Below, piece by piece: positions 2,077-63,887 of a DNA stretch of 64,000 bases. Within the stretch, counting starts at the first letter, position 1. Each line of letters opens with the position of its first letter. Below the pieces are notes generated by a model. That model did not search any database. It saw only the letters and a program-made list of their open reading frames with translations, and was not told the origin of the DNA. Source of the stretch: Zygnema circumcarinatum SAG 698-1b (taxonomy: Eukaryota; Plantae; Zygnematophyceae); contig CM074811.1 of NCBI GenBank assembly GCA_037447605.1, positions 2,418,001 to 2,482,000 on the forward strand, given 5' to 3'. A program made the translations under genes and the position numbers.

Positions 2077-2634
2077 TAATCCGGGGGAATTTCTTGGGTA
2101 ACGAAAAGTCCTCGGGTGGAAAATATTAGGGTATCTTAGTTTATACTAAATTCGGGAATTTACAACGGCCATGGTCAATGTCTGACTCCCCCTTGGCGGG
2201 GAAGAAGACAAAAGAATTCCGCGCAATTAGTTAGGTACTGAATTCACATACGGTTAATAGCAGGAATTTCCGGGAAATGAGGTCTCGCCACGTCACCATC
2301 ATTAAAACCCAGGAACCTGCCGCCCACAATAAATAATAATGTGATATCCGACGTGGCGCGCTGTCGACTGTCCGATGGACCCGACCGCAACTACTGGCCG
2401 TCCGATGCGTGAACGGCCGCGAGAGATATGCGGCGCCTCCAGGACGACCGAACGATTGGTCCGCGGCCGGCCGGGGCTTTTGTGACGTCATACATTCCAG
2501 TTGCGCCATTATGGCCATCTGACCGCAGCCAACCAGTGAGCTTGGTTGACTTTTGACGTGTCATGCATCACATTGACTGCGCATATTCCGCGTGTCTGCC
2601 AGCTGGCATTTCGGGCCGGCGGCCTTGTCCTGAC

Positions 2635-3975
2635 TAGGGATGGATTAATTACGACTATATAATATGGGTAGTGATATTTCCACCCCTTTTTTGGATCCAA
2701 ACACCCCTTCCCGGCCGGGCAGATTTCAAAAGGGATTAAAAACAGAAAATGCTTTTTTCATACCTTTTTGAAATCGATACCCACCTTCTTCCGTCGGCTG
2801 ATTTTATTTTTGCTAACCAAGGAAAATGATACCCCGTCGCATTTTACCGTCAATACTGTATCCCGCCTCCCTGAATTTATTTTTTGAGGGAAAGAAATAT
2901 CTGCCTGCCCGAATCCACTCGGAGTGGAAGATCCGTCCGCCACGAGATCGTTCGCGGGTGTCCGTCCTTCACACGTGTGTGTCAATCGCAGCTGTCGATT
3001 CCCTCGCAGATCACACCACTGCAGATCACCGTTCGATCTGCAGGCGGCCTCGATCTTAGCGAATGGAAAGCGCCCACGAGTCCCGTCAATGCCAAATCGC
3101 ACCTGCGAGTGCGCGCGTCCTTCGGCCCGAGATCTCGTCAATTGTTAGCTCCCAGCCAATAAACATATGTCACGTGTTACATTTTTGACGTGGAAAATTT
3201 TGATTGGTCTACGATCTCAATGTACAAAATTTTGGGTTCCTCAAGTTGCGACCGTACGACATTTGTACGGACAAACTTTTGAGAGGACTTTGGCGGGATA
3301 CGTGGGCACGTGCCATGCGCTGTGACCGAGCCCGGCTGCAGATCAAATAGTGATCTGCCGTGTTGCGATCTGCGAGGGAATCGACGGCTGCGATTGACCG
3401 CACGCGTGAAAAAAAATTCATGTAGGCGGGATATTCAAATGGGGTGACGGGTTATCATTTTCCTTATTTCGCAGAAATAAAATCTGCCGATGGAGGGTGG
3501 TATCGATTCCAAGAAGGTGTGAAAAAAGCATTTTCCGTTTTTAATCCTTTTTGAAATCTGCCCGGCCGGGAAGGGGTGTTTGGATCCAAAAAAGGGGTGG
3601 AAATATCACTACCCTATAATATATATTATATTATACAACTGTGACGACTAGATAACGGCTGATATATATTAATTTACAACGCCTTTACAACATGCACGGT
3701 CGTACGGTCATACGACTGTACGGTATTATGCGGCCCGAGCACGAGCAGACAGAGAAAACCATTGAACGCATTTCGCAACGCCAACGCCAAAACGACCTAA
3801 TTTTGGTATGGTACGACCGTACGACCGTACTCGTTCGGTCGAACGGTCGTTAATTGTTCAAAACGAGTGGGTATAATATATATAATAAAGTGTTTTACTT
3901 TGTAATATATTACTAATTTTAAACCCGTTGTAAATTATATAATATATTCAGAATTTATAACGCGGGCCATCCCTA
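2635..3975. mobile_element. Non-autonomous hAT (Ac/Ds-like) element carrying a nested foldback MITE
   Basis: TIRs TAGGGATGG (2635) and CCATCCCTA (3967..3975); perfect 8-bp TSD GTCCTGAC at 2627..2634 and 3976..3983. TAGGGATG termini with an 8-bp TSD are hAT hallmarks. A partial duplicate starts at 576. Confidence 0.9.
2666..3614. mobile_element. Long-TIR foldback (Mutator-like) MITE nested inside the hAT element
   Basis: Termini GGGTAGTGATATTTCC...GGAAATATCACTACCC. The inverted match is near-perfect for about 100 bp and continues more degenerately inward. 8-bp TSD TATAATAT at 2658..2665 and 3615..3622. Other copies of the family are at 607..1332 and 63363..63887. Confidence 0.85.
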
Positions 3976-4454: not shown

Positions 4455-7400
4455 ATGGCGCGCGCGCGGTCTCTCTCTCTCGCGGCGGCGCTCCTCCTCT
4501 TTGCCGCCGCCGCCGCCCCGCGCGAAGCCGCCGCTCAGGCCATCGACCCGCGAGACAGTGAGCCGCCGCGGCCCGCCCGCCCGCCCTCTGTGGAAGAAGG
4601 GGAGAGGCGGCCTGCCCGCGGCGGGGCCTCTGTTTGTGCTTTTTGAAGCGGACCGCGGCCACAATCCAATCCTGCATCTGCTCGCGCTTGGGCGCAGGGA
4701 ACACTCTTCTCGCTGTCAAAGCGGCATTCAACAACGCATCACAGCTCACCTCCTGGACAGCGAGTAACACCAACTGCAGCAACTGGGAGGGGATCACATG
4801 CGATGCAAGCGGGCGCGTTACTAATCTGTGAGTCACACTTTAACTAAACACCGCTGCAGCTGCGAAGAGGGTCTGCGGGAAGTAGCCTCCTCAGAAAGTG
4901 GCAAAGAAGGGCCGCCCGGAGCAGTCCTTCTCCTGCCCGCGGCCCTTTCTTCTTCTGACGCTCTCCCTGCTAACCTGCCTTACGAAATGCTAGTCATGTC
5001 ATGTCATGTCACGTCACGGAGTTTTATGGTCCTACGGCGTTGAAGGAACCATTTAACCTGCCATCGGTAACCTGAAAGAGATGAAAAAATTGTGAGACAA
5101 TCCATCACATAAAGTGCCACTGATAGAAATGCTAGTCGTGGCAGCATGTTTATGCAGTGCCTTTATTTTTGTTTTTGGCAGAGACTTGTACTCTAATTCC
5201 CTAACGGGGTTTATCCAGGATTCTATCGGCAACCTTGCGAATCTGCAATACTTGTAAGTATTTTTCCTCATAAATCTGAAATGAAAGTGATAGAAATGCC
5301 AAAAAGAAGAATGCCAGTGATAGAAATGCTAATCTTGGCAGCATGTTTATTCCGTGCCTATTTTCTTTATTTTTTGCAGATCCTTGTCTAATAATTCCCT
5401 GACGGGGTTTATTCCGGATTCTATCGGCAACCTTGCGAATCTGCAAATATTGTAAGTATTTTTCCCCATAAATCTGAAATGGAAGTGATAGAAATGTTAG
5501 ACAGAGGAATGTCAGTGAAAGAAATGCTCGTCGTGGAAGCTTGTTTATTTAGTGCTTATTTTCCTTATATTTTTCAGATACGTTGATCGAAATTCCCTAA
5601 CGGGGTCTATTCCGGATTCTATCGGCAACCTTGCGAATCTGATGACATTGTAAGTTTTTTTCCCCATAAATCTGAAATGAAATTGATAGAAATGTCAGGT
5701 AGAGGAATGCCAGTGATTGATATGCTAGTCGTTGCAGCATGTTTATTCAGTACCCCCTTTTTTTTTTTTTGGCAGAGTCTTGTCTGGTAATTCCCTAACG
5801 GGGTCTATTCCGGATTCTATCGGCAACCTTGCGAATCTGAAGTACTTGTAAGTGTTTTTCCTATAAATCTGAAATGAAATTGATAGAAATGCCAGACAAA
5901 GGAATGCCAGTGATAGAAATGCTAGTCATGGCAGCATGTTTATTCAGTGCCTTTTTTTTTTTGGCAGACGGTTGGATTCGAATTTCCTATCGGGGTCTAT
6001 CCCGGATTCTATCGGCAACCTTTCAAATCTGGACATAATGTAAGTTTTGAAGAATCTGAAAGCCCCTCGCCCCGTATCAGATCTTACTGACGTGTCGAGA
6101 ATCTTCCAACCAATCACGTCGCAGTGCCAGATGCCCTGCGCCACTCCCCCGACCCGTCCGCCGCCGTCCCACTCTCTCGCCGGCCCGCTCTCTCTCCTCC
6201 TCCTGCCGGTGCCGGCCCGCGAGCGGCCTTCCGCCCTTGAGAGGTCCCTTGGCGGCATCGCCTCCTTTATGCCGCGCTGCGCAAAGCCCTCCGCTCTCCA
6301 TGGAGGAGGAGATGCCGGGCAGCTGCTCATTGGTCGGTTGGCACGTGGCAACTTCGAGCTTGGGTTTGCATTTGAGCAATCATTGAACCAGTTTCAATTT
6401 TTTTTTTTTCTTTTTCTGCCGCAAAACGTCCGCCGAGCTCGTGAAGATATTTATGAAGATTGGCGGATGCTAATTCGCATGCAGAGGCTTTACTAATTCT
6501 GAGGGGCGTCATCCCGAACTCTATTGAGAATCTTTTGCGAATCTGTATGATTTGTGTGATTTGTATGGCTTGTTTTCTGAATTTAGAAGTGCAGTGACTC
6601 GTTGCATCTTGCAAAGCAGCAACTTTCGATGTTGTGTGTCCGTGATTGCGTGGCAAATCTTTGCCGTGTAGTTTTTTTCACTCTTCGTGTGTATACACGA
6701 GTAAATTTTAATCTCGCACTGCGTTTTTGTGAGACTGCGTTTGAGAATTAGACTATAGAACGTGGAGTTGAATACCTGATTTATTCCTGTTTAGTCCAAA
6801 ACCAGCCTTATATTTTTCGTTGATTTTTTTGTCGTTGCGTATGTCTGTAGGGACCTGAGCAGCAACAAACTGGAGGGGAGAGTGTCCGGCTTCATCTCTA
6901 AACTCACCCATCTGTGGTACCTGTAAGCACCGCTGCATCGATCACGCTGTATCTGCAGTTTGAATTTTTGCTCTCGGCCGAGCATTTGCACCTCTCAAAC
7001 TATTACATTTATTTCGCGCTTGCATGAGTTTTAAGTTTATGCCATATTTTTGGTCACTTCTGTCAGGGCGCGGGCTTTTTTGACGCCCAATAACGCGCAC
7101 TTTTTGCATGCAAGAGATTGGACTTCGTCGTAGAGAATTTAGGATTTAGAGTTTACGGATTGGGGTTGGGGTTCAGACTCTAAATTGTAGGCCATAAAGT
7201 TCGAGGGGTTTTAAGGGCTTATCAGTTAAAGGATTCAGAAGCTATGGGGGTTTAGTGGCTTCAGGGTTGATGGGATTGCAGGCAGAATGGGTGTAGGGAA
7301 AGGCTTAGAGATTTAGGGGTTCACTATTTGCAGGCTGCAGGTTGTGTAGGGTCGTGAAGGAGTCAGAAACTTTGCAGACAGCACGAGCGAATGTTTTCAG

Positions 7401-10400
7401 TGGCTATGACACAAGGAAGACTTGAATGGGTTTTGTTGGAAAGTTCCTCTCTCTCTCTCCCTCTAACGCGCCACCCTTATTGTCATCAGGTACTTCAACA
7501 ACAACAAATTGACTGGCTCCATAACTCTTGCTAGCGATTACCTTCAGGACCTAGAGATCCAATACAACTACTTCTCCGGGCCAATCAACATTACAAAGAA
7601 CGGGCAACCTTATTGCTCCTCCAACTACAACAACTTCAACTGCATTTATCGCAATATCACAGGATGTGGCGCAGCTCAAGCGCAGAAATCTCCGCAAGAG
7701 TGCGCGGCCTTCTGCCAGAGCGGTTCGCCCGAGGGAGCGTGCGGGGGCCGCGGCACGTGCGGGTACGGCAAGGCCACGTGTGCATGCGACAAGGGATATG
7801 CGCTGACAGCGGACACGTGTGGTGAGTTGCAACCTGCTGCATGTAGATACTCGTAAGAAAGGAAAAGTAAAGGGTGGCATACATTGTGGAAACTATCGCA
7901 TTGCTTTCAAATTTTACATAGTTTTGCTGTCAGAGCACACTTAATGCGATCCATGTGATTCAGCCAATAGTAGAGGTTCACTTCTCGAAATTCTAGAAGT
8001 ATATCCCAAATATTACTTGGTGAACTCTGCAAGCTCATTCAGAACATTGTGTAGAGTTTACTAGGATGTATCGAGAGTGCCGCTTCGATATCATGTTTGA
8101 AGCTTTTGATAATCTTTTCGACCCATCCAAATCGCGTGCAAGCTACAACATATCTCGGCTTCATTTGCAGTAGCTAGACAACCTGCGAGTTTGACATCGT
8201 TGCTTTTCAAAGAAAAAGTTGCATAGCCCGAGAGGAATGACATAAGAATTTGAATTTCCGTAGAGATGCATAGCCTGAGAGGCACATAGATGATGAAATC
8301 TCACGTCAAAAGACATAAGATATAAGCTTATTTTCACTCTGAAGGGTTTTCATTTCGTTCCGCATCCTCCCAGAACGTTTATAAGACGTGTTTCGAATAA
8401 CATATGTAAGATATGGAATAAGTGAATCCACCTTTAACTGTAAATGGGAACTCACGAAATGCTCTGAATTTCTGCAGTTTCAGCACCCCCTCCTCCACCC
8501 CCTCCTCCACCCCTTTCTCCGCCTTCACCACCCCCTCCTCAACGTCTCCCTCCGAGTCCTTCTCCTTCAGTCGTTTCTTCCCTGCCCGATGGTGGTACAC
8601 TTCGCCTTCTCCCTTGCCACCTCCTATGGCTTCTGCTGGGTCGTTTTCCGGTCTGTTCTTGTTTTTCTTGTGATAAGTTTTGAATGATTTGATTCGAGTC
8701 GCACGACATGAAGATCACCACAAAGTTGCGTCGCAGTCGTTGAATTCTTGTTTTGTTATCTTGAGGCTATCTGATGGGAAGTTAGTAGTTTTCTTTTGAC
8801 GTGAGATCCGACATAATCCTCTTCACAAGAAGCTAAGAGTTATCTTATTGCATCAAATTCTTAGGGAGGTCAACAGGACGCGCACATGTAAATAATGTAT
8901 AATATGTTCTATGCTGATCTGCAGAACGAGTTCTGCTGAGTTTCAAAGCGGCAATTGTATGCGATCTTAAAAACAAGTCAGGCAACTAAAAACCTGCTGT
9001 TGTTTCGTGCCAATGGAGCGGAGTGATGTGTGATGATAATCAGGTCCTCTTTTAATGTACGTATTGATGTTTGAGGTGCAGTCGATCATGCTCAACGGAT
9101 GCTCCATACAGTGAGGTTTATTGATCAGCCATTCTAATTCCTATGTATTGCTATCGGTTTTGTAACAGCTGCAGGTGACAAGAAATCGAGTCAAAAACTT
9201 GTTCCTATTGTTGCTGGAATAGCAGCTGCTGTTGGCCTTATTTCCGTAGCAGCGTTCATTGTATTCGTTTGGTGGATGCGCCGACGCAGAAGAGCTTCAT
9301 ATGAAGGTGCATAGGATGGCCTGTTGCTCCTTTCCCTTGCTTCCTCCTCTCTCTGCCACGCATGCACATCGCAACTATCTCCGGCTCATGCTGTGCACTA
9401 TCTTCAATTTCGTTCATCCTTATTCATCGACCGCCTCTTACAGTTCACTTTGCTTTCTCAAAAAAAGCGTGCCTCTCCTAATAGATCCCTCCCGTGAAAC
9501 AACGCATAGACGACGATAAACTGTCTACCGTCTCTTTCCCTTGATTCAAACACAACAAGCAATACATTACTCACATGACACTATACACAGCAGTTTGGGC
9601 ATATTTTTGCTCCACTCTCGTTCTGCTGCATATCTGAGTTTGACAAAACCAATTCCTTCTTATTTTTCCTCGTACAGACGTGCCAGGAGGGATGCTCTCC
9701 CGGGGGGCAGGCAGAGGCATCATTCAGTTGCCGGGAGGACATCTCATTCAAGCTTTGACCCTTGAAGAAGTTGCAGCAGCAACTGCAAACTTCAGTGCCG
9801 AGAACATCCTTGGAAAAGGAGGATATGGAACAGTCTACAGAGGGACTGCTCCTGATGGCTCCGTTTGGGCAGTCAAGAAAGCGTTGCGAGTGAGCGATGG
9901 AGAGGTCAACTCATTCTTTGAAGACGAGGTGGGTTCCATGACTGCATGGCAGAGGGAGTTTACTCTTCAGGAGAGAGCAGGTTGTGTGGAATGCTGATGC
10001 ATTTGGTTGAGTTCTTATCTTCATTTCATTATCTCTTCCAAAGGTCTTACCTCCATTCGCTGCCGATAATCATATGCAATGACTTGCACTTGCAGGAGAG
10101 GCTGCTGATATTGGGAGGGGAGGAAGTGCAGGTCAAACTGATCGCACCCATGGCGCACCGCAACTTGGTCTCTTTGAAGGGATTCTGTGCGGAGAAGGGA
10201 GAGCAGATTCTCATATATGAATTTGTGGCAAACGGAACCCTAAAGCAGCACCTCAAGCTCGATCCAAGTGAGGCCCCTTTCTCGATCACGCATTCTTGAG
10301 TGAAGGATTTGCTTCCATTGCCTGCATTCTAAAGCCTTGCAAAGCCCGACCATTTCCTCGTGGTTCCTTAAGTTCATTTTTTCCATGTACATTTGATGTC

Positions 10401-28560: not shown

Positions 28561-31500
28561 TCAGCGCATAAGGCTCATCGCTTCAACCTCTTGCTCTGTT
28601 ACATCGTCCTTTGTTTGGGCCGCTTCCCCCTGTGGTTTAGACTCCTTGGCTCGTTTCTTTCCAGGAAACTCAGGCCACACTTTCTTGCTTGTTTCCTCAT
28701 CCTCTTCATCAGCATCTGTGTCTGCCTCCTGATCAGCTTCGCTCACTCCCTCCTGTTCGCCTGCACTGTCTTCTTCTTCATTCGAACTTTCCTCTTCGTT
28801 ATCTGCCTTCCCCTTCTTCTTCCCCAACATCAGCCATGGCAGTCTCTTCTTTCGCTTCTCCAATACCCCTCCTGTCACACCCTCTTCGTCATCTGCACTT
28901 GCGTCCTTTTCCTTCGCTTCAGCCGGCCATGTCAGCCTCTTGTTCTTCTTCTCCGATTCCACTTCTGCAGCATCCCCTTCTTTCACTGCCTTAACAGGTT
29001 TCTCTTCTACATGCACCTCCTCCACAACATCCTTCCCTTCTACGATCGCCGCCTTAGCTTCAGCAGCTTCTACTTCCACACTCTGACTCTCTTCCTTCTC
29101 CTCCACCTTACCATCATTTCCACTCTGCATTGTTGTATCACCAGCCCCACCAGTACTCCCGCTTGCTGAATCTTCCACCGTGCTGCTGTTAGATGCATTC
29201 TTCCCGCCATCTCCGCCCCCTTGATCCCCACCTTTCCCTACTCTGTTCACATGCTTCACTCGCGGCCATGATCGAACCTTCCGGAAAGCCCAATGGCGGT
29301 TTCTCCGGCAGCCCTCCCGTGTAAGGCTGCAGGGAGGGCAGTCGGAGGGGGAGGGGGGGAGAGGCGGCAAATGAAAGCCGCTGCGCTCTTGGCAGGCGGT
29401 GCACTTCAGGCGGTGGTCATGGCAGACTGCACCCACAGGGAGGGGAGTGGGCTCTACTGGCCGGTGAGGGAGGGAGTGAGGGAGGGAGGGAGGGAGTGAG
29501 GGAGTGAGGGAGTGAGGGAGTGAGGGAGTGAGGGAGGTTAAGTGGCTAGAGCAATTGGGGAAGGGAAGGGAGTCCTGAGAGAAGTAGAAAACTGGGAAGC
29601 TCTACAACCTTGATAGGGGGGGAGAAGGAGGGGGGGAGTGAGGGTGACAACAGGGAGGTTGTCTTACTTTGAATACAGGGGTCCCGTATCGTGAGCAGTC
29701 CTAATTTCGCCATTTTATTCACCACAGCATACTCCCGTTTGTCACGCTCCTCATCCACAGGCCTTGCACAGGAGTCGTAGTATTGGTAGCTCACGTTTTG
29801 CTCATGATATGCCTGCAGGCCGGACGTAAGAAAAAAGCCTTTAGCTTTACATGTGATATAATCCAACTTACTGTCAATGTTCACGACAACGTGGCAATCA
29901 TTTCAAGGATTAAGGAGGAGGAAACCATACGCTCTCCTGAGACGAAGCAATAATCTGATTTCTTTCACATCAATGCTGCAGTGTCAAAACTGGAAGCAAC
30001 ACATCATACGCCCACACGTACAGGTCTACAATTCACGTAAGCGAGGAGCAGTACAACCAGTCCACCATTGCTAAGCCGATGAAACTACTGTAAAATTGGC
30101 AGAGAAACTCACATGAAAGCCATAAAGGTTCACTTCCGCGCAGCGCTGCAGTGCAAGGATTATTCCCAGAAAGCCCACAGAAGGCAAAAAATCGAACGAA
30201 GTGGCCACATATCGTACGAAGTCAGGACTTAGCCCCAACAACCGCATGCGAGGGAAACGCTGCCGCACGCGGACGAGGGCCACAAGGGCAGAGCGAGTGC
30301 GCAAAGGGACCAACACCATCTCTGAATACTGCTCAAAGTAACCCCAATTCTGGGCATTGGTGATGCGGACTGTGGTCTTATTACCCACGTTCTCATCATA
30401 CCCTTCTCGTGGAGCACTGTTGAAGCGCATAACAAGGTCATGCTCATCGATTTCTTTCCCCTGTTTGTAGTGGAGCAAGATTCCGGACGAGCCTACAATG
30501 GCACATCGGTTGTAGACTTTGCCTGCTGAGAGAGGGTCGCGTGCTGCATTACAGAAGGATACACGGGAGAAAGTTTACAAATTATTGCATCAATTAGTAT
30601 GTCGATTGAGAAATTTAAGTGTTTATAAGCTCTCGATGAGTAGCACTTCCAAAAAAAATTCCCAGTACTGGACCTCTGCATGTTAGGTTCGCACTCACCG
30701 TCATGCATGACAAAAGCTCTATTAGCCCTACCGCACCCTCAAAAATTCTTGTTGTAAGCTTTTTAGAAACCCTGGGGTGGAACATAGATCTCCTGAGCAG
30801 CTTCCTGCTTGATAACAGTCCCAGTCTATGACCTGAAAACTAACTGGACCCTGAATGCAAAAACGGGCCTATCAGATGAGGTCCAAAGGACAAAAAGCGG
30901 GAGAAAACAAAAGCTGCAAGTAGTCTATACATTTACCGTAGCCATTGAGACGATAGGATCTCTCGGCCTTTATGCAAGTGCACTCTTGGTGATATTAGAA
31001 ACTTGATGACAGATATTCTATGATTGCCGCAAACCTTGACAGCTGCACTCACATGCTACATTTGCATGTTGCTTCAATGGCTATAGAGTAATCGCCCTAT
31101 GTAAATACCATTTGTTAATTGCTTGGAGACGTTAAGAGTGAGGGGAAAAGAAATCCCTTCCGTGTGCACCTAAATTCTGAGTCCAGGGTTTGTAGAGGGC
31201 TCAGCAACCCATTCACCAGGCTAAATGTGAAACGTTGTAACTGCGTGTCCCTGCCGTAAAGGTAATGCAAGCTTTTTAAGAAAAAGTAGAACTATCGTAC
31301 CAGGAAGATTCTCAATGAGATCGGTACTCACTGAACCGAGCACACGCTGCCCCTTGTCGGGATCATGCACCTTCTCTGGCAGGTAGGCTACAATCCACTT
31401 GTGGGCCTCCACAGTGCGTCGATTTAGGGTTATGTCTCCCACGTATTTGGGTTCCATCTTATAAAGAGCTCCCTTTTTTGGAAGATCGATGCCTTTCTGG

Positions 31501-46707: not shown

Positions 46708-46964
46708 GCTACAGTACCCCTATTGTACACCACATGAGGGAGGGAGGGAAGGGCGGGAGGGGGGGAGGGAGGAGAGAAGGGACGGCGAGGGCGAGGGCGA
46801 GATGGAGTGACCGCGCTTTAGGTTGAAAACGGAGAAATTCGCACGCGTTGCGCCGGGCGGCAGTTTGGCGTTGACGCGGCGCGACATTTTCGGCGGCTGC
46901 GATTGGCCGAGCGGAGGCTGCCGGCGGGCGGGGACAGGAGTCTCACAGATCGCAATGGCGTTTG

Positions 46965-49040
46965 CAGCGCGACAGCGATTATTCACTCATGTGGCAATCG
47001 GCAACTAGAGGAACTCAACCGTAACTCAACGGTTGAGTGCGTTGGACGATGTTTGGCCGACAGACCGCTTGGAGCAAGCGGCACATTGGTGAACACGTCA
47101 CTAGATAGGGCAAAGATGGCAGAATATGACATGGCACAAACGAGATCGGCTTTTTCTTGAAACAGTACATATAAAAAAAAACCAAGTGCAAAGCTTATCC
47201 GACAAGTCCATTCATTGAAAACATATTGTTCCCCGCCTGCCATCACTGTAAGTGAATCACAATTGGTCCAAAATAGCTCCTTGCTTATTAAGTACGAAAC
47301 ATTTCTGATGGAGACTACTCCCACTCCTTGGCGGCCCGCAAAACTCCTAACCACCCTTTGGTCAAACAACGGCCAGTATAAGTTACCCCTATCCCGTAGA
47401 AGCGGCAGCAGCCATAATCCGCTTGCTCTTCCTGCGGCGTTTGAAGCGAAGGTTTCAACTCTCGCAGGTGCTCCCCCTCCACCTGCCAACGCTTAGCACG
47501 AAGCCTTGTACACACCTCCACTTACTGTATATTTGCAGCCAATGGCGGTGACCAGAGTCGTCAAAGAGTACGACCCCGTCAAAGAAGTGTAATAAGTAGG
47601 GCAACCGTTGACGTTTCCCCCGGAAAGAGCCCCCGCCACATTCGCACCGTTGTAGGGACTAAAGATCGGCCCTCCGCTCATTCCCCCTTCTACGGAGACG
47701 TCATCGCACATGATTGCCGAGGAGTAGCCATTGCAACCGAGATTCAGCGAAGTTGTGGTCACGTCGTAAACGAGCTTGAACCCATCCTGGGTTGCAGCAG
47801 GATAGCCGAAATTGGCGCGTGGGTTGGCGGAGGAAGGGCTGCTCCATGAGTACGTCTGCCCTCCAATGTTGTTCTGCAGCTTCACTAAAGCAATGTCACT
47901 GCCGGCGTTGAGAGTATTTCCCCACGAGGGTGCCGACTGAAACGCAGAAAACACCATGACATTCGAGTAGTAGGATCCGGAGTAAGAGCTGTCAGATCTT
48001 GTGTTCAACTTTGTGAACGCTGCCAGGTTGTAGGAGGACACCAACCACACGTTCTTGTCGGTGTCATACAGGCAGTGGCCAGCTGTCAGCACGAGGTTGG
48101 GGGCGATCAGCGATCCCGAGCAGTGAGCTACCCACTGACCGTTGCTGTTCGAATAAGCAAGCTTCACAACCCCCGAGCTCATGCCGCTGTCCTCGAACCC
48201 TGGAATGACAGCTGCGGCGGGTAAACCCTGGTTGCAGTTCAGGAACCCCTTCGGAGCTAAGGCCTTGGCCTCCTTGGAGCCGTAGCGGATGAACCGAGCG
48301 CCGGATCCACCGACCGTGGGCAGAGTCATGTAGCCAGAAAAGGTCATATTTTTGGGAAAAGGTAAATGCTTGTTCGTCGAGGGGGCTTTGAAGCCCACTG
48401 TTGCCGGGGGAGTGCTCGCCAACTCTCTCCGTGCCACGCCAGGCAGCTCCGCTGCGCTCGTGGACGAATCCGAGTCCGGCTCGGCATGTTTGGGGAGAGA
48501 ACTGCATCAAAATTGCAGACTTGATTATTACAAAGGAGGGTTTGGGAGTGTTCGCAAGGGTGTGGAGAAGATGAGAAGACAAAGGCAGCAGGTCAGACAC
48601 TGAGCACAGTACAGTCAGCTAAATACAAGAAGAAATTCATACATGTCAATTATGCGGCCCGCGCTGTCACACACAACGCCCTCCAACTGATCGCAGCCCG
48701 CCCTCTCCACCAAGGCCTTCAGGTTCAAGAGAAGTTTCTCTGCACGCAGCAAGTCGTGGCAGCTGAATCAACGATCAGAAAGTAGTGGCATAAATGCATG
48801 ATTCCATTCGAACCCATCTACTTGAAGCTGTGCTATTGGCAATATGGCAACGAGCTCAGAACTGCAGTAGAATGCAAGGCGTGACCTCACCTTGGTCTGG
48901 ATCAAGGGGCACCGCACGAGTGAAAATAGGCAGCGCCACCAGGAGGGCGCAGATGAGGAGAGGGCAGATACGCGCGAGTGGAAGGGCATCCATGGTCATA
49001 GCTGCCCGCGAGGGAGGGAGGGGGGGAGGGAGGGAGGGAG
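46965..49040. repeat. About 2.1-kb dispersed duplication, paired with about 59845..61985
   Basis: Colinear similarity spanning the 3' flank, all three exons, both introns and the GAGG-rich 5' leader of the protease gene; offset about 12.9 kb. Confidence 0.9.
47493..48993 (-). CDS. Secreted trypsin-fold (S1, V8/Mpr-like) serine protease with LRR N-cap module, copy A (402 aa)
   Basis: Exon 1 48993-48891 (103 nt, signal peptide MDALPLARICPLLICALLVALPIFTRAVPLDPDQ); exon 2 48739-48643 (97 nt, EKLLLNLKALVERAGCDQLEGVVCDSAGRIID); exon 3 48501-47493 (1009 nt) with CSGSLIAPNLVLTAGHC, SDIALVKL, GYP and GMSGGP (complete His-Asp-Ser triad). Phases join in frame. Confidence 0.88.
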
Positions 49041-49630
49041 GGAGGAAGGCGGTGAGAGCAAGCGGGGAGGTCAGAGAGCGTTCCGGAATGTTGCTACGCT
49101 GCAAAGCGGAGTTCCGCTAAGTACTCGCCGGGCTTGCCGTCTGCCGTACGGCCCCGGAGGGTGGCCGCCAGAAGGATCCTGGATGACGTGGCGTGCTCCT
49201 ATTCGGTTGTTTGAAAATCAGTGTGTTGCAAACCAATCAGGAGCCACCGACAAGCCGTCGGCTTGTGCGACAGGCGGAAGGCGGTCGCCGAGTCGCCCGC
49301 GATCGCGTCGCAGAGGCTGTGATTGGCGGAGAACGTCGCTGAAGTCGCCGGATTCGAATCGCACCGTTCGAGCGCGGGTGGCTGTCGGTACAGGGGAGAG
49401 GTCAACGGCGGACAGCGAACGGCGCGCCGGTGCGGGCGATCCCGTGCCAAAACGAGTACTCTTTATCGATTGGATAACTATATTGCAAAATTACTCGTTC
49501 GGAAAACGGACCGGGCGACAGTTTCGTCCGCAGTAATACTGCGATTGCGGGTTCGATGAATCGGACAAGGAAAATGCCTCGTCGGATGGCAAGGTTGATT
49601 TTCTTTTACGATTGCGAGTTCCATGTTCCA

Positions 49631-50321: not shown

Positions 50322-50935
50322 ACATGGCCACATGTGACATGGCCACATGCGACATGGCCACATGCGACATGGCCACATGCGACATGGCCACATGCGACAT
50401 GGCCACATGCCACATGGCCACATGCCACATGGCCACATGCGACATAGCCTCATGTGACATGGCCACATGCGACATAGCCTCATGTGACATGGCCACATGC
50501 GACATGGCCACATGCGACATGCCACATGCCACATGTCCACATGCGACATAGCCTCATGTGACATGGCCAATGCGACATGGCCAATGCGATATGGTTACAT
50601 GCGACATGGCCACATGCGACATTGCCACTTGCGACAATGCCACATGGGACATGGCCACATGTGACAAGGCCACATGCGACATTGCCACATGCGACATGGC
50701 CACATGCGACATGGCCACATGCGACAATGCCACATGCGACATGGCCAATGCGACATGGCCATTGCGATATGGTTACATGCGACATGGCCACATGCGACAA
50801 TGCCACATGGGACATGGCCACATGTCACAAGGCCACATGCGACATTGCCACATTTGACATGGCCACATGCCACATGGCCACATGCGACAATGCCACATGC
50901 GACATGGCCACATGCAAGTATGCAACATGGTCACG
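50322..50935. repeat. 15-bp minisatellite (ATGGCCACATGCGAC), about 40 degenerate units
   Basis: Directly visible. It produces spurious DMATC/HVACG-repeat ORFs on both strands. Confidence 0.92.
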
Positions 50936-52126: not shown

Positions 52127-55100
52127 ATGGAAATGCCAGCGCCAATGGATTATTCGACACCACTTGTCCGCCGTTATTTGTCTGACTTGAAACATGACGA
52201 CAGCCGGGATGAAGCAATCAAATCTTTAAGGTGCAAAATCCTCTACACAACTCTTATCAATTACAGAACTCAACTGGAGCAAGAAAGATGTATGTCAATA
52301 GAGAAGGTCCTGCATCCTATCTTCGTTTATCGCCTTATAAATGGCGCGTTGCCCATGAACAAGTCGCGAGATGTCTGTTCCAAATGCAGCAATTTCAGTC
52401 TTCTTTGGGCAGTTCCAAGCAGTTCAAGGAGAGTGAAGAAGCAGGTCTATTTCATGGAGCGATTGCTGCAACAATTGCTCCTTTGGGTTTCACAGGCAAC
52501 AAGTACTGCAAATGGAACCCTCTGCCATTCCACGCTTTGTGCACCATGTCTCAGAGTCAAGTGGACAAGGGACACCTAAAAAATACGCAGGTCGGTTGCC
52601 CCCGTTTTGCATTCGTGCTATGTCTTGTTAAGCTGGGTTGGATAGAATGGCTTGGATTGCGGCATATCATAAATAAGTGTGTCCGGCGTAGTACGTCTTG
52701 AACTGTTCTGGATTGACTCAGAATGAAACAAACTAGCTCTGTCAGTATGGCAAAAGATGGAAAATTACTTATTATGAGATGGGCCCTTTGCGGAAAAGTG
52801 AAATATCTTCCGATTTCGCAGCATTGTCTAGCAGTTTCAGGAATGGACATCACTTGGGTCGCTTCCTGCGTTACTTCTAACTTCTTTCTTCTGTTCCCTT
52901 ATGATTCTTTAGTGGCCTTGTATGGAGAGTGTGCGCGGAAACATGGACCCAACATCATCCCTCACATACCAAAGATAATTGGCAGCATGATTCGGCAAAT
53001 GTCCCAAGACTGGTGCTCATCAGTCTTTCAAGAAGCATGTGCCAGCACTATCTTGGAGATAGTCCGCTATGGCGCCAAAGATCACCGGCAGGCGGGTGAG
53101 TCTCCCATTGTGCTTCACTCAGATCCAATGTGGAACGTGGGAATATAGTGAGGTGTATCTCATCAAGTGGTTGGTTTTTTGTTTGCCGCAGAGGATGTGG
53201 TCGGATTCGTTGCGGAAATGCTTTCTCCTTCATTGACGGATCGCTGTGAGCCATTGGCCACTGGAGCAGCAGTGTGCTTGGAAGCGCTGATTTCATGCGA
53301 GAAATGGAAAACGGTGAGACTTGCTTGCGAGAATAGTATACACGTGACTGACCAGATCGGCGTCCTCTTAACTGTTATGATTGAGACGCCACGTCGTCAG
53401 AAAGCACGAGCTACATATTGCACACAGCTTAATCGAAGACGCAGGTTGTCCGTTTTAGGACTTCAATTCAAAAGCATTGTTTAAACCAGCTGGTCGGCCG
53501 CTCGACAGACGGTTTGATTTGACCATTTTATGTTCCATGGCCGCTGATTCTCCAGAAGGTTGGTATCTGTGCATTATCCTTCACTTTTCCACGGAGATTG
53601 TGTGGTGTCTGTCTGTGAGTCCAGGCGAGTGAGAGCACAGCGAGAGAGGCTTGGCGCACCGCAGTGCAGGCGGTGGCAGATCCGCTGAGGATGGTGGCGC
53701 ACTTGCAGCTCGCCTTGGCACTGACTCGCACTGGCAGTAATCTTCTGCAGGTGAGCATGGAGACAGGGGAAAGGAGAAAGGGAAATGGGAGGGAGCATGA
53801 GCATGGAGACATGGGAAAGGAGAAAGGGAAATGGGAGGGAGCATGAGCATGGAGACAGGGGAAAGGAGAAAGGGAAATGGGAGGGAGCATGAGCATGGAG
53901 ACATGGGAAAGGAGAAAGGGAAATGGGAGGGAGCATGAGCATGGAGACAGGGGAAAGGAGAAAGGGAAATGGGAGGGAGCATGAGCATGGAGACATGGGA
54001 AAGGAGAAAGGGAAATGGGAGGGAGCATGAGCATGGAGACATGGGAAGGAGTGGGAAATGGGAGGGAGCATGAGCATGGAGACATGGGGAAGGAGTAAGG
54101 GAAATGGGAGGGAGCATGAGCATGGAGACATGGGAAAGGAGTAAGGGAAAAGGGAGGGAGCATGAGCATGGAGACATGGGAAAGGAGTAAGGGAAAAGGG
54201 AGGGAGCATGAGCATGGAGACATGGGAAAGGAGAAAGGGAAATGGGAGGGAGCATGAGCATGGAGACATGGGGAAGGAGTAAGGGAAATGGGAGGGAGCA
54301 TGAGCATGGAGACATGGGGAAGGAGTAAGGGAAATGGGAGGGAGCATGAGCATGGAGACAGGGGAAAGGAGAAAGGGAAATGGGAGGGAGCATGAGCATG
54401 GAGACATGGCAAAAGGAGCCCCCCCCTGGAGGCCATTTGGTGCCTGGAAACATGGAACATGGATTTTCAATTTAAGGTTGCATGAGTTTCTGTGTCTATG
54501 GCCTGACCTGTTGCAGTGCCACTCATCATTTTTTTCTTTTTGTGGACGTGCCGGGTCAATCAGGAGCATGCCAAGTTGCTTCTTTCAGCGGCGTTGGAAG
54601 TGCTGACTGTAGCCAGCCAATGGCAACGGCGCTTGTATGCTGTTAAGCTCATCGCTGAGGTCCTCAGCAGGTGAGAGTTTGCTTGAGTTTGAGCTTTGAC
54701 GAAGACAAGACAGGCCAAAGGAGCCTTACTAAAGATCTTCTTACATACGCATAACTCTACTCATACCCCTGAACACATACAATGAATTAGGGCATGCACA
54801 GAGCTGAGTCCTACCCGCCCTTCACTCGCCGGCCGATTGCTCAGTTTTTTATGGTATGAAATTCTATGTGTGGATCCTTTTTAATCTGAATGTACAACCG
54901 GACCCGACGTTTGCAGACTATGATAGCGATCGTTAGGTTCAGCAGGCAGCGTTGGCTTGTGGCTATGAAACAATAACTGAGTCAGCATGTGATATCCTCT
55001 CCTGATCTTACCTTTTCATACTGATCTCTTGGCAGATGTGAAGAGGCCACCTTCCATGATGAGGTCGAAGAGGTAGAGTCGGTCCTGATCAGCTGCGAGG

Positions 55101-59404: not shown

Positions 59405-59612
59405 TAATTCTATCAGATAGTGGCGTAAATGCACGCTTCCATTCGAATCTATCATCAACACCTTGAACCAGTATTAATGCCAACATGGCAGCGAGGAGCT
59501 CAGTACTCAAGAGCCAGTAGAATGCAAGGCGTGACCTCAACTTCTTCAGGATCGAGGGGCACCGCACGTGTGAACGGAGGCAGCGCCAGTAGGAGGGCGC
59601 CGAGGAGGCGAT
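59405..59612 (-). pseudogene. Truncated third copy of the protease gene's exon 1 and intron 1
   Basis: Encodes ...LLGALLLALPPFTRAVPLDPEE but has no ATG, and the donor GT is mutated to TT (59540). The intron matches about 48775-48890 and 61680-61807. Confidence 0.8.
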
Positions 59613-60389
59613 GGCGCTTTCCAATCGCTCGTCGCCACGTGGTTCCCAAGGACCAGTTTCGATGCAACGCCTGGTACGGCACTGTCGACACGTGGGCTCA
59701 CAATCATCGACTCGCGGTGACCGTCGGTCGATGTCAGTTGCAAGTGTGGATTCCGTGTCATTCGATGAGCGAAGTGAAGAAGGTGAATTGCACTCAGAAG
59801 TGGAGAACCTGCCAAGGTGGTGCAAACACTCAAGACGCTCTAATGCAGTGCGACAGCGATTACTCACTCATGTGGCAGTCGGCAACTAGAGGAACTCAAC
59901 CGCAACTCAACGGTTGAGTGCGTTGGACGCTGTTTGGCCGACAGACCGCTTGGAGCAAGCGGCACATTGGTGAACACGTCACTAGATAGGGCAAAGATGG
60001 CAGAATATGACATGGCACAAACGAGATCAGCTTTTGCTTTAAACAGTACAAATAAAAAAGACCAAGTGCAAAGCTTGTCCGAGAAGTCCATTCCTTGAAA
60101 ACATATTGTTCCCCCGCCTGCCCTCACTATAAGCGGATCACAAAAAATTATCAGCATTGGTCCCAAAACAGCTCCTTGCTTGTTAAGTACGAAACATTTC
60201 TGATGGAGACTACTCCCACACCTTGGCGAACCGCAAAACAACTACCCACCCTTTGGTCAAAAAACGGCCAGTATAAGTTACCCCTATCCCCTAGAAGCGG
60301 CAGCAGCCATAATCCGCCTGCTCTTCCTGCGGCGTTTGAAGCGGAAGGTTTCAACTCTCGCAGGTGCTTCCCCCTCCACCTGCCAACGC

Positions 60390-61910
60390 TTAGCACGTCG
60401 CCTTGTACACACCTCCACTTACTGTATATTTGCAGCCAATGGCGGTGACCAGAGTCGTCAAAGAGTACGACCCCGTCAAAGACGTGTAATAAGTAGGGCA
60501 ACCGTTGACGTTTCCCCCGGAAAGAGCCCCCGCCACATTTGCACCGTTGTAGGGACTAAAGATCGGCCCTCCGCTCATCCCCCCTTCTGCGGAGACGTAC
60601 TCGCACATGATTGCCGAGGAGAAGCCATAGCAGCCGCGAGTCAGCGAAGCTGTGGTCACGTCGTAAACGATCGTGTAGCCATCCTGGGTTACAGCAGGAT
60701 ACCCGAAATTGGCACGTGGGTTGGCAGAGGAAGGGCTGCTCCATGAGTATGTCTGCCCTCCAATGCTGTTCTTCAGCTTCACTACAGCAATGTCACTGCC
60801 GTTAAAGAGAGTCTTCCCCCACGTAGGCGACGTCTGAAACGCAGTAAACAACCTGACCTCTGAATAGTAGGCTCCGGAGTAGTAGCTGTCAGAGTCGGTG
60901 TTCAATCTTGAGAACGCTGCCAGGTTGTAGGAGCCGCCCACCAACCACACATTCTTGTCGGTGTCATACACGCAGTGGCCAGCTGTCAGCACGAGGTTGG
61001 GGGCGATGAGCGATCCGGAGCAGTGACCTATCCACTGACCGTTGCTGTTCAAAAGCGCGAGCTTCACAACCCCCGAGCTCATGCCGGTGTCCTCGAACCC
61101 TGGAATGACAGCTGCAGCGGGTAAACCCAGGTTGCAGTTCTTGAACCCCTTCGGAGCTAAGGCCTTGGCCTCCTTGGAGCCGTAGCGGATGAGCCGAGCG
61201 CCGGATCCACCGACCGTGGGCAGAGTCATGTAGCCGGAAAAGGTCAAATTTTTGGGAAAAGGCAAATGCTTGTTCGTCGAAGGAGCCTTGAGGCCCACTG
61301 TTGCCGGGGGAGTGCTCGCCAACTCTCTCCGTGCCACGCTAGGCAGCTCCGCTGCGCTCGTGGACGAATCCGACTCCGGCTCGGCATGTTTGGGGAGAGA
61401 ACTGCATCAAAATTGCAGACTTTGATATTAAAAAATAGGGTTTGGGAGTGTTCGCGAGAGTGTGGAGACCCATGCGAAGGGGAAAGGCAGCAGGTCAGAC
61501 ACTGAGCACAGTAAAGTCAGCCAACACGGAGAAAAAATTCGTACAGGCCAATGATGCGGCCCGCGCTGTCACATGTAACGCCCTCCAACTGATCGCAGTC
61601 CGCCCCCTCGACCCACGAGGCCTTCAGCTGCAAGAGGAATTTCTCTGAATGCAGCAAAAAGTGACAGCTGGAGTGAAGATCAGAAATTAGTGGCAGAAAT
61701 GCATGCTTCCATTCGAATCCATCATCATATCCTTGAAGCAATATTAATTCCAACATGGCAGCGAGCTTACTACTCAAGCGGCAGTAGAATGCAGGGCGTG
61801 GTCTCACCTTCTTCAGGAGCGAGGGGCACCGCACGCGTGAAGGGAGGCAGCGCCGCCAGGAGGGCGCAGAGGAGGAGAGGGCAGATACGCGAGAGCGGGA
61901 GGGCCGCCAT
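60390..61910 (-). CDS. Secreted trypsin-fold serine protease with LRR N-cap module, copy B (404 aa)
   Basis: Exon 1 61910-61808 (103 nt, MAALPLSRICPLLLCALLAALPPFTRAVPLAPEE); exon 2 61644-61545 (100 nt, EKFLLQLKASWVEGADCDQLEGVTCDSAGRIIG); exon 3 61401-60390 (1012 nt) with TAGHC, SDIAVVKL and GMSGGP. Frame intact. Confidence 0.88.
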
Positions 61911-63067
61911 GGCTATGATTGCGCGCGAGGGAGGGAGAGAGGAGGGAGGGAGAGAGGAGGGAGGGAGGGAGGGAGGGAGGGAGGGAGAGTGTGTTGACCG
62001 CGCGCTTGGCGAACCGTTTTTTTTTTATCTATGATCCGATTCACAGTTCTGTTACTCGGTCGCTAAACTTCCACATGGATCCGCCTATTGGATGTTAGTG
62101 CTAAGTATCATGTCGGCCGTGGCGTGCCTTGATTGGACTAAATTGGTCAAAATGATTCCCTCCAGATAGGAGCCACCGACAAGCAAATTCGCACGCAGCA
62201 TTCCTGCGATTGGCGGATGCCGTGAAGATTTTTCGCCAGCTGGCGTTGACCGTTGCCTGTCGAATCCCGTTTAATGCATACAGTCAGCAATCCTCATATT
62301 TTCCACCCTGTACAAGTGCGTCCCCAAGAAATTCGCCCCGATTTTGCCGAAACCACCTTTCTGTACGGTAACTTTGTGTTAGCCGTACAATTTGTACAAT
62401 CCATACTACAGTAGCTGTACTAGCCGTACTAGCCGTACTAGTTGTACTAGCCGTTACGGGCTTACGCAAAACTAACACCGAATCTCCCCGCACGTGCCGC
62501 CGTAAGAGGCGCTCGCTCTTCTCCCCTTCTTCTTGGCTTCGATACGAACGCTACGATATGATACGATACGATACGACCCGATACGGTATTGTCCGTACTT
62601 AGCCGTTACGGTATGGTGTTACGATTTGGCTTGATACGATACGATGCTAAGCGATACAGTACGGTACGGTACACAACGGTACGGTACGAAACGTACGGTT
62701 CAACATGAACTCTAACATAATACCGCCCGTCTATTGGTAACACGAACCTTGTATTTGCAAAATCAAGATTTTCGCCTCATATTTGCCAAAACCATGGCGA
62801 AAATATGACTGCTGACTGGTATGGCTACGCGCCAAGGTCTGCAGGCGTCACGCCAAGAAACGACAAAGTGCGTGACGAGTCCTTCCAACAGCCAGGTCAT
62901 TCCGCGCGCCGCCAGCTCTGCTACTTTGGGATCTTGCGTACGGTTTCGTACGCAAGCCCCGGCCCGGCGGAACCGGCGGGCGGTCGTTGACGTGCTTGAC
63001 CCCCTCGCGGCCCCTCTCTCTGACCGCGCGGAGGCGCCGCCACGTGGTGCGCTCCGCTCGATCGGAA

Positions 63068-63362: not shown

Positions 63363-63887
63363 GGGTAGTGCTATTTCCACCCCTTTTTTGGATCCAAACA
63401 CCCCTTCCCGGCCGGGCAGATTTCAAAAGGGATTAAAAACAGAAAATGCTTTTTTCACACATTTTTGGAATCGATACCCACCTTCATCCGTCGGCTGATA
63501 TTATTTTTGCTAACCAAGGAAATGGATACCCCGTCACCGCATTTTGAATACTGTATCCCGCCTCCCTGAATTTTTTTTTTGAGGGAAAGAAATATCGGCC
63601 TGCCCGAATCCGCTCGGAGCGGAAGATCCGTCCGCCACGAGATCGTTCGCGGGTGATCGTCCTTCACACTTGTGTGTTAATCGCAGCTGTCGATTCCCTC
63701 GCAGATCGCACCACTGCAGATCACCGTTCGATCGGCTGCCGGGCTCGATCTCAGCGAATGGAAAGCGCCCACGAGTCCCGCCAAAGCCGAATCGCACGTG
63801 CGAGTGCGCGCGTCCCTCGGCCCGAGATCTCGTCATTGTCAGCTCCCCGCCAATCAATAGCTGCCACGTGCTATTTTTTGACGTGGA
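63363..63887. mobile_element. Diverged partial copy of the GGGTAGTG foldback MITE family
   Basis: Colinear with 2666..~3190, with scattered substitutions; ends at the N-gap 63888..63897. Confidence 0.85.

What the first reader, a model, noticed from the sequence alone, without database searches (positions are those of the whole stretch)
47493..48993. Chimeric gene: LRR-receptor signal and N-cap exons spliced onto an intronless bacterial-type serine protease
Seen: exon 1 (103 nt, phase 1) ends AVPLDPDQ, as RLK exon 1 in this window (103 nt, phase 1) ends AQAIDPRD. Exon 2 (phase 1 to 2) encodes LLL.LKA...CDQLEGVVCDSAGRIID, matching the RLK cap exon LLAVKAA...[17 protein letters not shown]. Exon 3 begins ISLP/LSLP, like the start of an LRR, then switches to a linker and a roughly 1-kb intronless S1 protease with an intact triad (TAGHC, SDIAL, GMSGGP) and the GYP motif. 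Established: CSGSLI.P..VLTAGHC, GYP and GxSGGP typify bacterial V8/Mpr-like proteases, and plants largely lack secreted chymotrypsin-fold proteases of this type. Inference: a horizontally acquired protease was domesticated by fusion into the 5' end of an LRR receptor gene, gaining secretion and regulation. This is a candidate new class of secreted defence or wall-remodelling enzyme.
Basis: partly seen in the sequence, partly recalled or inferred. Interest (0 to 1): 0.88.

Follow-up and report, generated by a model that had tools for sequence, protein, structure and literature searches.

The report
Secreted protease gene with receptor-cap exons
This green alga transcribes and splices a gene, present as a tandem pair, for a secreted bacterial-style (V8-like) serine protease whose first two exons look borrowed from a leucine-rich-repeat receptor gene. 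The build is real and rare, but a bacterial origin and a defence role are not shown.

Summary
The three-exon model on the minus strand (48993-48891, 48739-48643, 48501-47493; 402 aa) is exact. Spliced RNA contigs from four runs show both GT..AG junctions and no junction inside the 1,009-nt third exon.

- **Protease:** exon 3 is a true S1 protease. It scores on Pfam Trypsin (1.5e-12) and keeps the His142/Asp202/Ser275 triad. A confident AlphaFold model lies closest to Bacillus glutamyl endopeptidase, Esp and V8.
- **Cap:** It still aligns to the cap of the receptor-kinase-type gene in this window far beyond chance (z above 13). Both introns sit at the same aligned positions and phases as in that gene. 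The 41%-identical relative P0001 carries a fuller cap that picks out plant LRR receptor ectodomains in the PDB. An exon-shuffled, decayed LRR cap is therefore likely.
- **Bacterial origin:** horizontal transfer is not shown. The best bacterial matches are 24-30% identical, the closest relatives are rare eukaryotic sequences (one from Tribonema), and the tree is unresolved.
- **Other copies:** an expressed paralog lies at 61910-60390 and a dead exon-1 relic at 59615-59412.
- **Earlier scan note:** the scan already noted this gene type on another piece of this genome (s1-337030).
- **Function:** extracellular proteolysis is inferred, not tested.

The parts
48994..49089 (-). 5' UTR with a CT-rich (CCCT)n tract; the alternative start ATG is at 48999-48997
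   Evidence: RNA contigs reach 49000 in all four runs, and one reaches about 49089 in X2. Sequence read.
48891..48993 (-). Exon 1 coding part: signal peptide, ends AVPLDPDQ, phase 1
   Evidence: The junction 48891|48739 is seen in spliced contigs of X1-X4.
48740..48890 (-). Intron 1 (151 nt, GT..AG)
   Evidence: Skipped in contigs of four runs.
48643..48739 (-). Exon 2: shortened LRR N-terminal-cap-like module (LL..LKA helix, C-x7-C-D-x-x-G-R-I), phase 1 to 2
   Evidence: No Pfam LRRNT_2 hit. Local alignment to the receptor cap scores 58, z = 13, with 0 of 5000 shuffles as high.
48502..48642 (-). Intron 2 (141 nt, GT..AG), at the same aligned column and phase as the cap/first-LRR intron of the receptor gene
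48219..48501 (-). Exon 3, first part: ISLP remnant, Ser/Asp/Pro-rich linker and pro-region (one conserved N-x-T sequon). The pro-region is shared with cap-less relatives.
   Evidence: Alignment A1. The model has pLDDT 46-82 over this part.
47496..48218 (-). Exon 3, S1 protease domain: His142 at 48077-48075, Asp202 at 47897-47895, Ser275 at 47678-47676, plus the GYP motif
   Evidence: Pfam Trypsin 1.5e-12 and Trypsin_2 5.6e-8. The triad is invariant across 94 sequences. The model has pLDDT above 90 here, with Z = 24.1 to 1p3c.
47197..47495 (-). Stop codon (47495-47493) and 3' UTR of about 300 nt
   Evidence: RNA depth ends at about 47197-47250.
60390..61910 (-). Tandem paralog B with the same three exons (61910-61808, 61644-61545, 61401-60390); 85% protein identity, also transcribed
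   Evidence: All 14 variant letters in the RNA contigs equal B's bases.
59412..59615 (-). Dead relic of a third copy: part of exon 1 plus intron 1, no start codon, donor GT changed to TT
4455..4827 (+). Comparator: signal exon (4455-4557) and LRRNT_2 cap exon (4698-4827) of the LRR receptor-type gene
   Evidence: Pfam LRRNT_2 2.9e-9. Coordinates. A kinase motif HRDIKSEN lies downstream at 10745.

Best explanation
This is a real nuclear gene, one of an expressed tandem pair, that encodes a secreted pre-pro-enzyme. Exon 1 gives a signal peptide. Exon 2 gives a shortened, two-cysteine remnant of an LRR N-terminal cap. The single 1-kb exon 3 gives a Ser/Pro-rich linker, a pro-region and a V8/glutamyl-endopeptidase-like S1 serine protease with a complete His-Asp-Ser triad. 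The two 5' exons most probably came from an LRR-receptor-type gene by exon shuffling onto a protease that already had its own pro-region. This happened before the split from the relative P0001, and tandem duplication followed. Shown: transcription, splicing, the protease fold and triad, and the statistical similarity and shared intron positions of the cap. Inferred: secretion, activation by removal of the N-terminal part (probably including the cap) as in V8-type enzymes, and extracellular endoproteolysis that is probably not Glu-specific.
For: Four runs show the spliced contigs, with word depth in the thousands in three of them, and paralog B is transcribed as well. Pfam gives Trypsin at 48.2 bits against a cut-off of 20.6. 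The triad is invariant in the 10- and 94-sequence alignments. The AlphaFold model has pLDDT 83 and pTM 0.84. Its top solved matches are 1p3c (Z 24.1), Esp (22.6) and V8 (22.2), just above elastase (22.1). All its ESM Atlas neighbours by shape are bacterial trypsin-like or V8-like clusters. The nearest named sequence neighbours are 'V8-like Glu-specific endopeptidase' and 'YdgD'. For the cap, the A, B and P0001 regions score 58, 69 and 80 against the receptor cap, with z above 13 and 0 of 5000 shuffles as high. Nine of ten PDB hits for P0001:30-85 are plant LRR-receptor caps. Both introns share position and phase with the LRR gene. P0001 also shares the linker motif ARR.L, which places the fusion before their divergence. 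A versus B gives dN/dS of 0.56, so both copies are constrained.
Against: Pfam LRRNT_2 does not detect the cap in A, B or P0001. The cap lacks the conserved Trp and about 11 residues. The signal-peptide exons are not similar (p = 0.31). No protein-level data show secretion, processing or activity. The structural margin of the V8-like group over S1A is small. A sequence profile ranks animal elastase (2e-14) above 1p3c (2.7e-8). In the alignment to chymotrypsin C, position 213 is Leu. The claim that Glu-specific enzymes have His there rests on recalled knowledge only, so specificity is unknown.
Confidence: 0.7

Rival explanations
1. One reading: a bacterial V8/Mpr-type protease gene entered this algal lineage by horizontal transfer and was then domesticated by fusion to the 5' end of an LRR receptor gene.
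For: The protease exon is intronless in a genome where LRR genes have an intron every 72 nt. The structural and named sequence neighbours are bacterial V8-like proteins. In the tree the family sits in the half holding non-Asp194 S1 proteins, and every named row of that half is bacterial. Arabidopsis and rice have only DegP-type S1 proteases (PMC1560137). The family is very rare: 9 representatives below 1e-10 among 1.84 billion.
Against: The best matches in one genome for each of 185,579 bacterial and archaeal species are only 24-30% identical. The closest relatives (29-41% identity) are a cap-bearing transcript, a Tribonema gayanum transcript, and contigs of unknown origin. The tree is a polytomy at the relevant depth with many long branches. 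Cap-less relatives share the pro-region, so any transfer predates this lineage's fusion.
Confidence: 0.3
2. The cap resemblance is convergent or coincidental. On this view exon 2 is just a cysteine-bearing piece of a pro-peptide with no LRR ancestry.
For: There is no LRRNT_2 hit even at E up to 10. A PDB search with exon 2 alone returned only designed 'Pizza' propeller proteins. The motif is short.
Against: Alignment z-scores are above 13 for three separate sequences. P0001's fuller cap, with the SW and C..W.G..C motifs, retrieves plant LRR receptor caps. Two introns share position and phase with the LRR gene.
Confidence: 0.12
3. The gene pair is decaying or non-catalytic: protease homologues kept for a non-enzymatic role.
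For: dN/dS is fairly high (0.56 overall, up to about 0.9-1.4 in short segments). One neighbouring copy is already a dead relic.
Against: The triad, the GYP motif and all eight cysteines of exon 3 are intact in both copies. Both are transcribed at high depth. The frames are open.
Confidence: 0.05

Closest known systems
Bacterial S1B-type glutamyl endopeptidases (Bacillus intermedius 1p3c, S. aureus V8 1qy6/1wcz, S. epidermidis Esp 4jcn/6tya); COG 'V8-like Glu-specific endopeptidase'
   Same: These are the best structural matches (Z 22-24, TM 0.72-0.80 by target). They share the triad order, the lack of Asp before the catalytic Ser, the GYP-type motif, and the secreted pre-pro build.
   Different: Sequence identity is only 15-20%. 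The position equivalent to chymotrypsin 213 is Leu, so Glu specificity is doubtful (with recalled knowledge of V8). This gene is eukaryotic and spliced, and it has extra N- and C-terminal cysteines and an LRR-cap-like module that the bacterial enzymes lack.
Animal S1A chymotrypsin-like elastases / chymotrypsin C (1bru, 1est, 4h4f)
   Same: These are the best hits to the sequence profile (2e-14) and are nearly as close in structure (Z about 22). The His-loop disulfide Cys127-Cys143 pattern (CSGSLI...TAGHC) is shared.
   Different: There is no Asp194 (the motif is GMSGGP) and no Cys191, so the Ile16-Asp194 zymogen switch and the 191-220 disulfide are absent.
Plant LRR receptor N-terminal cap (Pfam LRRNT_2, PF08263), as in the LRR receptor-type gene of this window
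   Same: Shared features are the LL..K helix, the C-x7-C-D-x-x-G-R-[IV] motif, the following L.L strand, and introns at identical positions and phases.
   Different: The module falls below Pfam detection, has lost the Trp and about 11 residues, and no LRR repeats follow it.
P0001 (431 aa, transcript-like contig of run SRR8128906) and the LRRNT-trypsin gene pair noted earlier in this genome (s1-337030)
   Same: The architecture is the same: signal peptide, cap, linker with ARR.L, pro-region and GMSGGP protease. P0001 is 41% identical.
   Different: P0001 keeps a fuller cap (SW...C.QW.G) and a possible decayed repeat after it. Its organism is unknown to me, and it could be a paralog from the same species.

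Membership tests
Peptidase family S1 (chymotrypsin fold) | Profile match above the curated threshold | tested here: met
   PF00089 scores 48.2 bits against a 20.6 cut-off, and PF13365 scores 34.1 against 27.6.
Peptidase family S1 (chymotrypsin fold) | Catalytic triad in the order His, Asp, Ser | tested here: met
   His142, Asp202 and Ser275 are invariant in the 94-sequence alignment and in the family alignment.
Peptidase family S1 (chymotrypsin fold) | Double beta-barrel fold | tested here: met
   The domain of the model has pLDDT above 90. All 996 compared S1 chains score Z of 8 or more, with the top at 24.1.
V8-like / glutamyl endopeptidase group (S1B, COG3591) | Closer to this group than to other S1 subfamilies | tested here: inconclusive
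   The top six structural hits are 1p3c, Esp and V8, but the margin is small (24.1-22.2 against 22.1 for elastase). The sequence profile prefers elastase. Named neighbours are V8-like or YdgD. The tree is unresolved.
V8-like / glutamyl endopeptidase group (S1B, COG3591) | Glu-specificity determinant (His at the position equivalent to chymotrypsin 213; the rule is recalled, not looked up) | tested here: not met
   The alignment to chymotrypsin C places Leu at that position (GALSGG).
V8-like / glutamyl endopeptidase group (S1B, COG3591) | Activation by pro-peptide removal that frees a defined N-terminus | not testable with these tools
   The only indirect hint is that structural alignments to the mature enzymes start at model residue 85.
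LRRNT_2 cap (PF08263) | Profile match | tested here: not met
   There is no hit at E up to 10 for exon 2, for the first 80 aa of A and B, or for P0001. The receptor cap in the window scores 37.5 bits.
LRRNT_2 cap (PF08263) | Two-cysteine motif followed by the G-R-V..L.L strand, similar beyond chance | tested here: met
   z is above 13 with 0 of 5000 shuffles as high. P0001's cap retrieves plant LRR receptor caps in the PDB.
LRR receptor / receptor-like protein | An array of leucine-rich repeats after the cap | tested here: not met
   After ISLP the sequence turns into a Ser/Asp/Pro linker and then the protease. No LRR Pfam hit was found.
Horizontally acquired bacterial gene | Nested with support inside a bacterial clade, or a close bacterial relative exists | tested here: inconclusive
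   The best bacterial identity is 24-30%. The relevant forks have under 95% SH-aLRT support and many are drawn open, and the closest rows are eukaryotic or of unknown origin.

The most novel reading that the evidence does not exclude
The cap remnant is kept because it works. The Cys-x7-Cys-Asp-x-x-Gly motif is about as conserved between this gene and its 41%-identical relative as the protease domain. It could act as a recognition or auto-inhibitory module that ties a secreted protease to LRR receptors or their peptide ligands. That would be a protease-receptor link in a close algal relative of land plants, built on an enzyme type that land plants lack.
Probability: 0.1. Interest if true: 0.8.

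Novelty: new variant of a known kind. Interest (0 to 1): 0.45.

Why it matters
Flowering plants have no secreted chymotrypsin-fold proteases; their S1 family is DegP only (PMC1560137). A highly transcribed, secreted V8-like protease family in a streptophyte alga shows part of the extracellular protease repertoire present near the origin of land plants and absent from flowering plants. The gene is also a clean case of exon shuffling: signal and cap exons of the LRR receptor family, with intron positions and phases preserved, joined to an unrelated enzyme. If the origin of the protease can be resolved, it would add a dated example to the debate on bacterial gene transfer into streptophyte algae.

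Tried and rejected
- **Word-index protein search:** with exon 3 it found nothing. With the family profile it returned only P0013 and distant bacterial Rhodobacteraceae proteases, so it did not help map the taxonomic range.
- **First AlphaFold model:** built from 10 sequences, it was too poor to rank folds (pLDDT 58). It was replaced by a 94-sequence model.
- **Genome scan with the 10-sequence alignment:** the alignment had no conserved stretch to search with. The scan was repeated with a 4-sequence alignment.
- **PDB search with exon 2 alone:** it gave only designed Pizza propellers through summed weak repeats, which I judge spurious.
- **NCBIfam:** it gave nothing useful.
- **Neighbouring ORFs:** Pfam on ten large ORFs nearby gave no context.
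- **Literature:** searches found no description of an LRR-cap/S1 fusion and no paper naming run SRR8128906. A Penium secretome paper lists a 'secreted serine protease' with a Streptomyces best hit (PMC6027541). I did not compare its sequence, so it is context only.
- **Positive selection between the paralogs:** considered and rejected. No 40-codon segment gives a convincing excess of replacement changes.
- **Disulfide pairing and S1-pocket geometry:** these could not be read because model coordinates are not exposed.

Full report
**Observation**

I read the minus strand from 49400 to 47200. Joining 48993-48891, 48739-48643 and 48501-47493 gives an open frame of 1,209 nt (402 aa). All three boundaries have canonical GT and AG signals. 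A second in-frame ATG lies two codons upstream, at 48999.

These are AVPLDPDQ at the end of exon 1, LLLNLKA...CDQLEGVVCDSAGRIID in exon 2, (I)SLP at the start of exon 3, and TAGHC, SDIAL, GYP and GMSGGP.

The comparator gene on the plus strand also fits. It has a 103-nt phase-1 first exon (4455-4557, ending AQAIDPRD). Its cap exon is 130 nt, phase 1 to 2 (4698-4827). A 72-nt LRR exon follows at 5182-5253. A kinase motif, HRDIKSEN, lies downstream at 10745.

**Transcription and splicing**

Nine runs of one organism were listed for the stretch, and six of them hold it. I laid the contigs of four runs on 46800-49500. All four contain one contig that joins 48501 to 48643 and 48739 to 48891, exactly as predicted, with GT..AG on the minus strand. 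Overlapping pieces cover exon 3 from 48501 to about 47200 with no further joint. Word depth is in the thousands in three of the runs. The transcript runs from about 49000-49089 to about 47200. This is therefore a real, spliced nuclear gene and not bacterial contamination.

**Copies in the window**

A self-comparison shows 46963-49049 repeated at 59844-61972 with 88% identity. Copy B (61910-61808, 61644-61545, 61401-60390) has the same three exons and an open frame. It is 85% identical in protein, and dN/dS between the copies is 0.56.

Identity along the pair is mosaic. It is 70-84% over the 5' exons and introns, 93-97% over the linker, about 80% over the middle of the protease, and 96-98% over the 3' end. 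Synonymous divergence ranges from 0.03 to 0.31. This pattern suggests patches of gene conversion.

All 14 variant letters seen in the RNA contigs equal B's bases, so B is transcribed too.

A third fragment lies at 59615-59412. It holds part of exon 1 plus intron 1, has no start codon, and its donor GT has changed to TT. It is a dead relic.

**The protease**

Exon 3 scores on Pfam Trypsin (1.5e-12, 48.2 bits) and Trypsin_2 (5.6e-8).

An exhaustive HMMER scan of 1.84 billion representatives found only nine proteins below 1e-10. The best is P0001, at 41% identity. The family is therefore small and isolated. Its members:

- P0001 comes from a 1,479-nt transcript-like contig of run SRR8128906.
- P0002 is a Tribonema gayanum (EukProt) transcript.
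- The others come from run assemblies or metagenomes of unknown origin.

The family alignment shows an invariant triad of His142, Asp202 and Ser275. It also shows the GYP motif and several conserved cysteines, including Cys89, Cys127, Cys143 and Cys300. The pro-region is shared by cap-less members.

A first structural model from 10 sequences was poor, with pLDDT 58. A model from 94 sequences reached pLDDT 83 and pTM 0.84, with the domain above 90. Against solved structures:

| Method | V8-like group | S1A proteases |
|---|---|---|
| Foldseek (TM by target) | 1p3c 0.80; Esp 0.70-0.74; V8 0.73 | elastases 0.66-0.71 |
| VIA-align (Z) | 1p3c 24.1; Esp 22.2-22.6; V8 22.2 | elastase 22.1, then a long S1A plateau |

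All nearest ESM Atlas clusters by shape are bacterial trypsin-like or V8-like. The nearest named sequence neighbours are annotated 'V8-like Glu-specific endopeptidase' or 'YdgD'.

A sequence profile of the family nevertheless ranks porcine elastase (2e-14) above 1p3c (2.7e-8).

Taken together, this is an S1 protease of the V8-like kind, but only by a modest margin. The residue before the catalytic Ser is Met rather than Asp, and there is no Cys191. The S1A zymogen switch is therefore absent. The position equivalent to chymotrypsin 213 is Leu. From recalled knowledge that Glu-specific enzymes carry His there, I would not predict Glu specificity.

**The cap**

Pfam LRRNT_2 does not hit exon 2, the first 80 aa of A or B, or P0001, even at E up to 10. 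The receptor cap exon in this window scores 37.5 bits (2.9e-9).

Three other lines of evidence still point to homology.

- **Alignment.** Local alignments of the A, B and P0001 cap regions to the receptor cap score 58, 69 and 80. Each has z above 13, and none of 5,000 shuffles reached the real score.
- **PDB search.** P0001 residues 30-85 retrieve ten chains from 177,635 PDB sequences. Nine of them are plant LRR receptor ectodomains (TMK1/3, HAESA, FLS2, BRI1-like 3), aligned at cap motifs.
- **Introns.** Intron 1 falls two to three residues before the LL..K helix in phase 1. Intron 2 splits the codon between GR[IV]..[DN] and the following L-strand in phase 2. Both match the receptor gene exactly.

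Compared with the receptor cap, exon 2 has lost about 11 codons and the conserved Trp. The signal-peptide exons are not similar in sequence (p = 0.31), so only their length and phase agree.

P0001 shares the linker motif ARR.L and the pro-region with A, so the fusion predates their divergence. Cap-less relatives such as the Tribonema protein share the pro-region. The cap was therefore added upstream of an existing pre-pro-protease.

**Origin of the protease**

I scanned one genome for each of 185,579 bacterial and archaeal species. It returned 345 relatives, and the best were only 24-30% identical. Most were Rhodobacterales and other Alphaproteobacteria.

A maximum-likelihood tree of 95 domains is largely unresolved. 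The window genes lie in a weakly supported half of the tree (81% SH-aLRT) that holds non-Asp194 sequences. Every named row in that half is bacterial, but many rows have no known origin and there are many long branches.

This fits an old bacterial connection but does not show it. A recent transfer is excluded. The intronless exon and the absence of such enzymes from Arabidopsis and rice (PMC1560137) are suggestive only.

**Mechanism**

I commit to the following, with its status marked. The product is a secreted pre-pro S1 endopeptidase. It has a hydrophobic N-terminal signal, eight cysteines in exon 3 plus two in the cap, and one conserved N-x-T sequon. These features are read from the sequence, and secretion itself is inferred.

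Structural alignments to the mature V8-type enzymes begin at model residue 85. The enzyme is therefore probably activated by removal of the N-terminal part, which would carry the cap and linker. This too is inferred.

The role could be nutrient scavenging, wall or matrix turnover, or action on microbes, and this is open. A secretome study of another streptophyte alga lists a bacterial-like secreted serine protease (PMC6027541). I did not compare its sequence.

**Known or new**

I found no paper describing this architecture. The scan itself has already reported a tandem pair of LRR-cap/trypsin fusion genes on another piece of this genome (s1-337030). This locus is therefore a further member of that family and not a first sighting.

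I rate it as a new variant of a known kind: a V8-like secreted protease, in a eukaryote, with shuffled receptor exons.

Noticed in passing
window 60390-61910 (-) versus 47493-48993 (-): Identity between the two paralogs is mosaic (70-84% at the 5' end, 93-98% in the linker and 3' end, about 80% mid-domain). Synonymous divergence ranges from 0.03 to 0.31. This suggests gene-conversion patches. In run X1 the one piece with paralog B's letters has a far higher depth (179) than pieces identical to A (5-11).
   Followed up: partly
window 59412-59615 (-): A relic of a third copy holds part of exon 1 and intron 1. The splice donor is mutated to TT and there is no start codon.
   Followed up: yes
window 1-1332 versus 2060-3391: A 1,332-bp stretch is repeated at 100% identity, and the first copy ends at a run of N (1333-1342). 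Related 91%-identical copies lie at 63363-63887, next to another N run. This is a possible assembly artefact or a very young repeat.
   Followed up: no
window 53752-54418 and 50322-50930: Two blocks of tandem repeats are present. The first has copies offset by about 92 bp at 94-97% identity. The second has many short offsets at 85-91% identity. Both lie between the two protease genes.
   Followed up: no
window 49001-49056, 61925-61990, 29470-29532: CT-rich (CCCT)n tracts lie just upstream of the start codons of both protease genes, and a similar tract occurs at about 29.5 kb. The P0001 transcript also has a CT-rich leader (L001:1-120).
   Followed up: no
window 9014-9031 (+) and 10745 (+): A second cap-like C-x-W-S-G-V-x-C motif and a kinase HRDIKSEN motif lie downstream of the LRR exons. 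The comparator may therefore be one long LRR receptor kinase gene or two genes.
   Followed up: no
L002 (ENA ERZ27257064, 42.6-kb contig), gene at 5001-6266: Family member P0003 lies on a metagenome contig with intron-free neighbouring genes, one of which has an RNA polymerase Rpb1 domain-5 hit. This could be a protist or a giant virus, and the origin is unknown.
   Followed up: no
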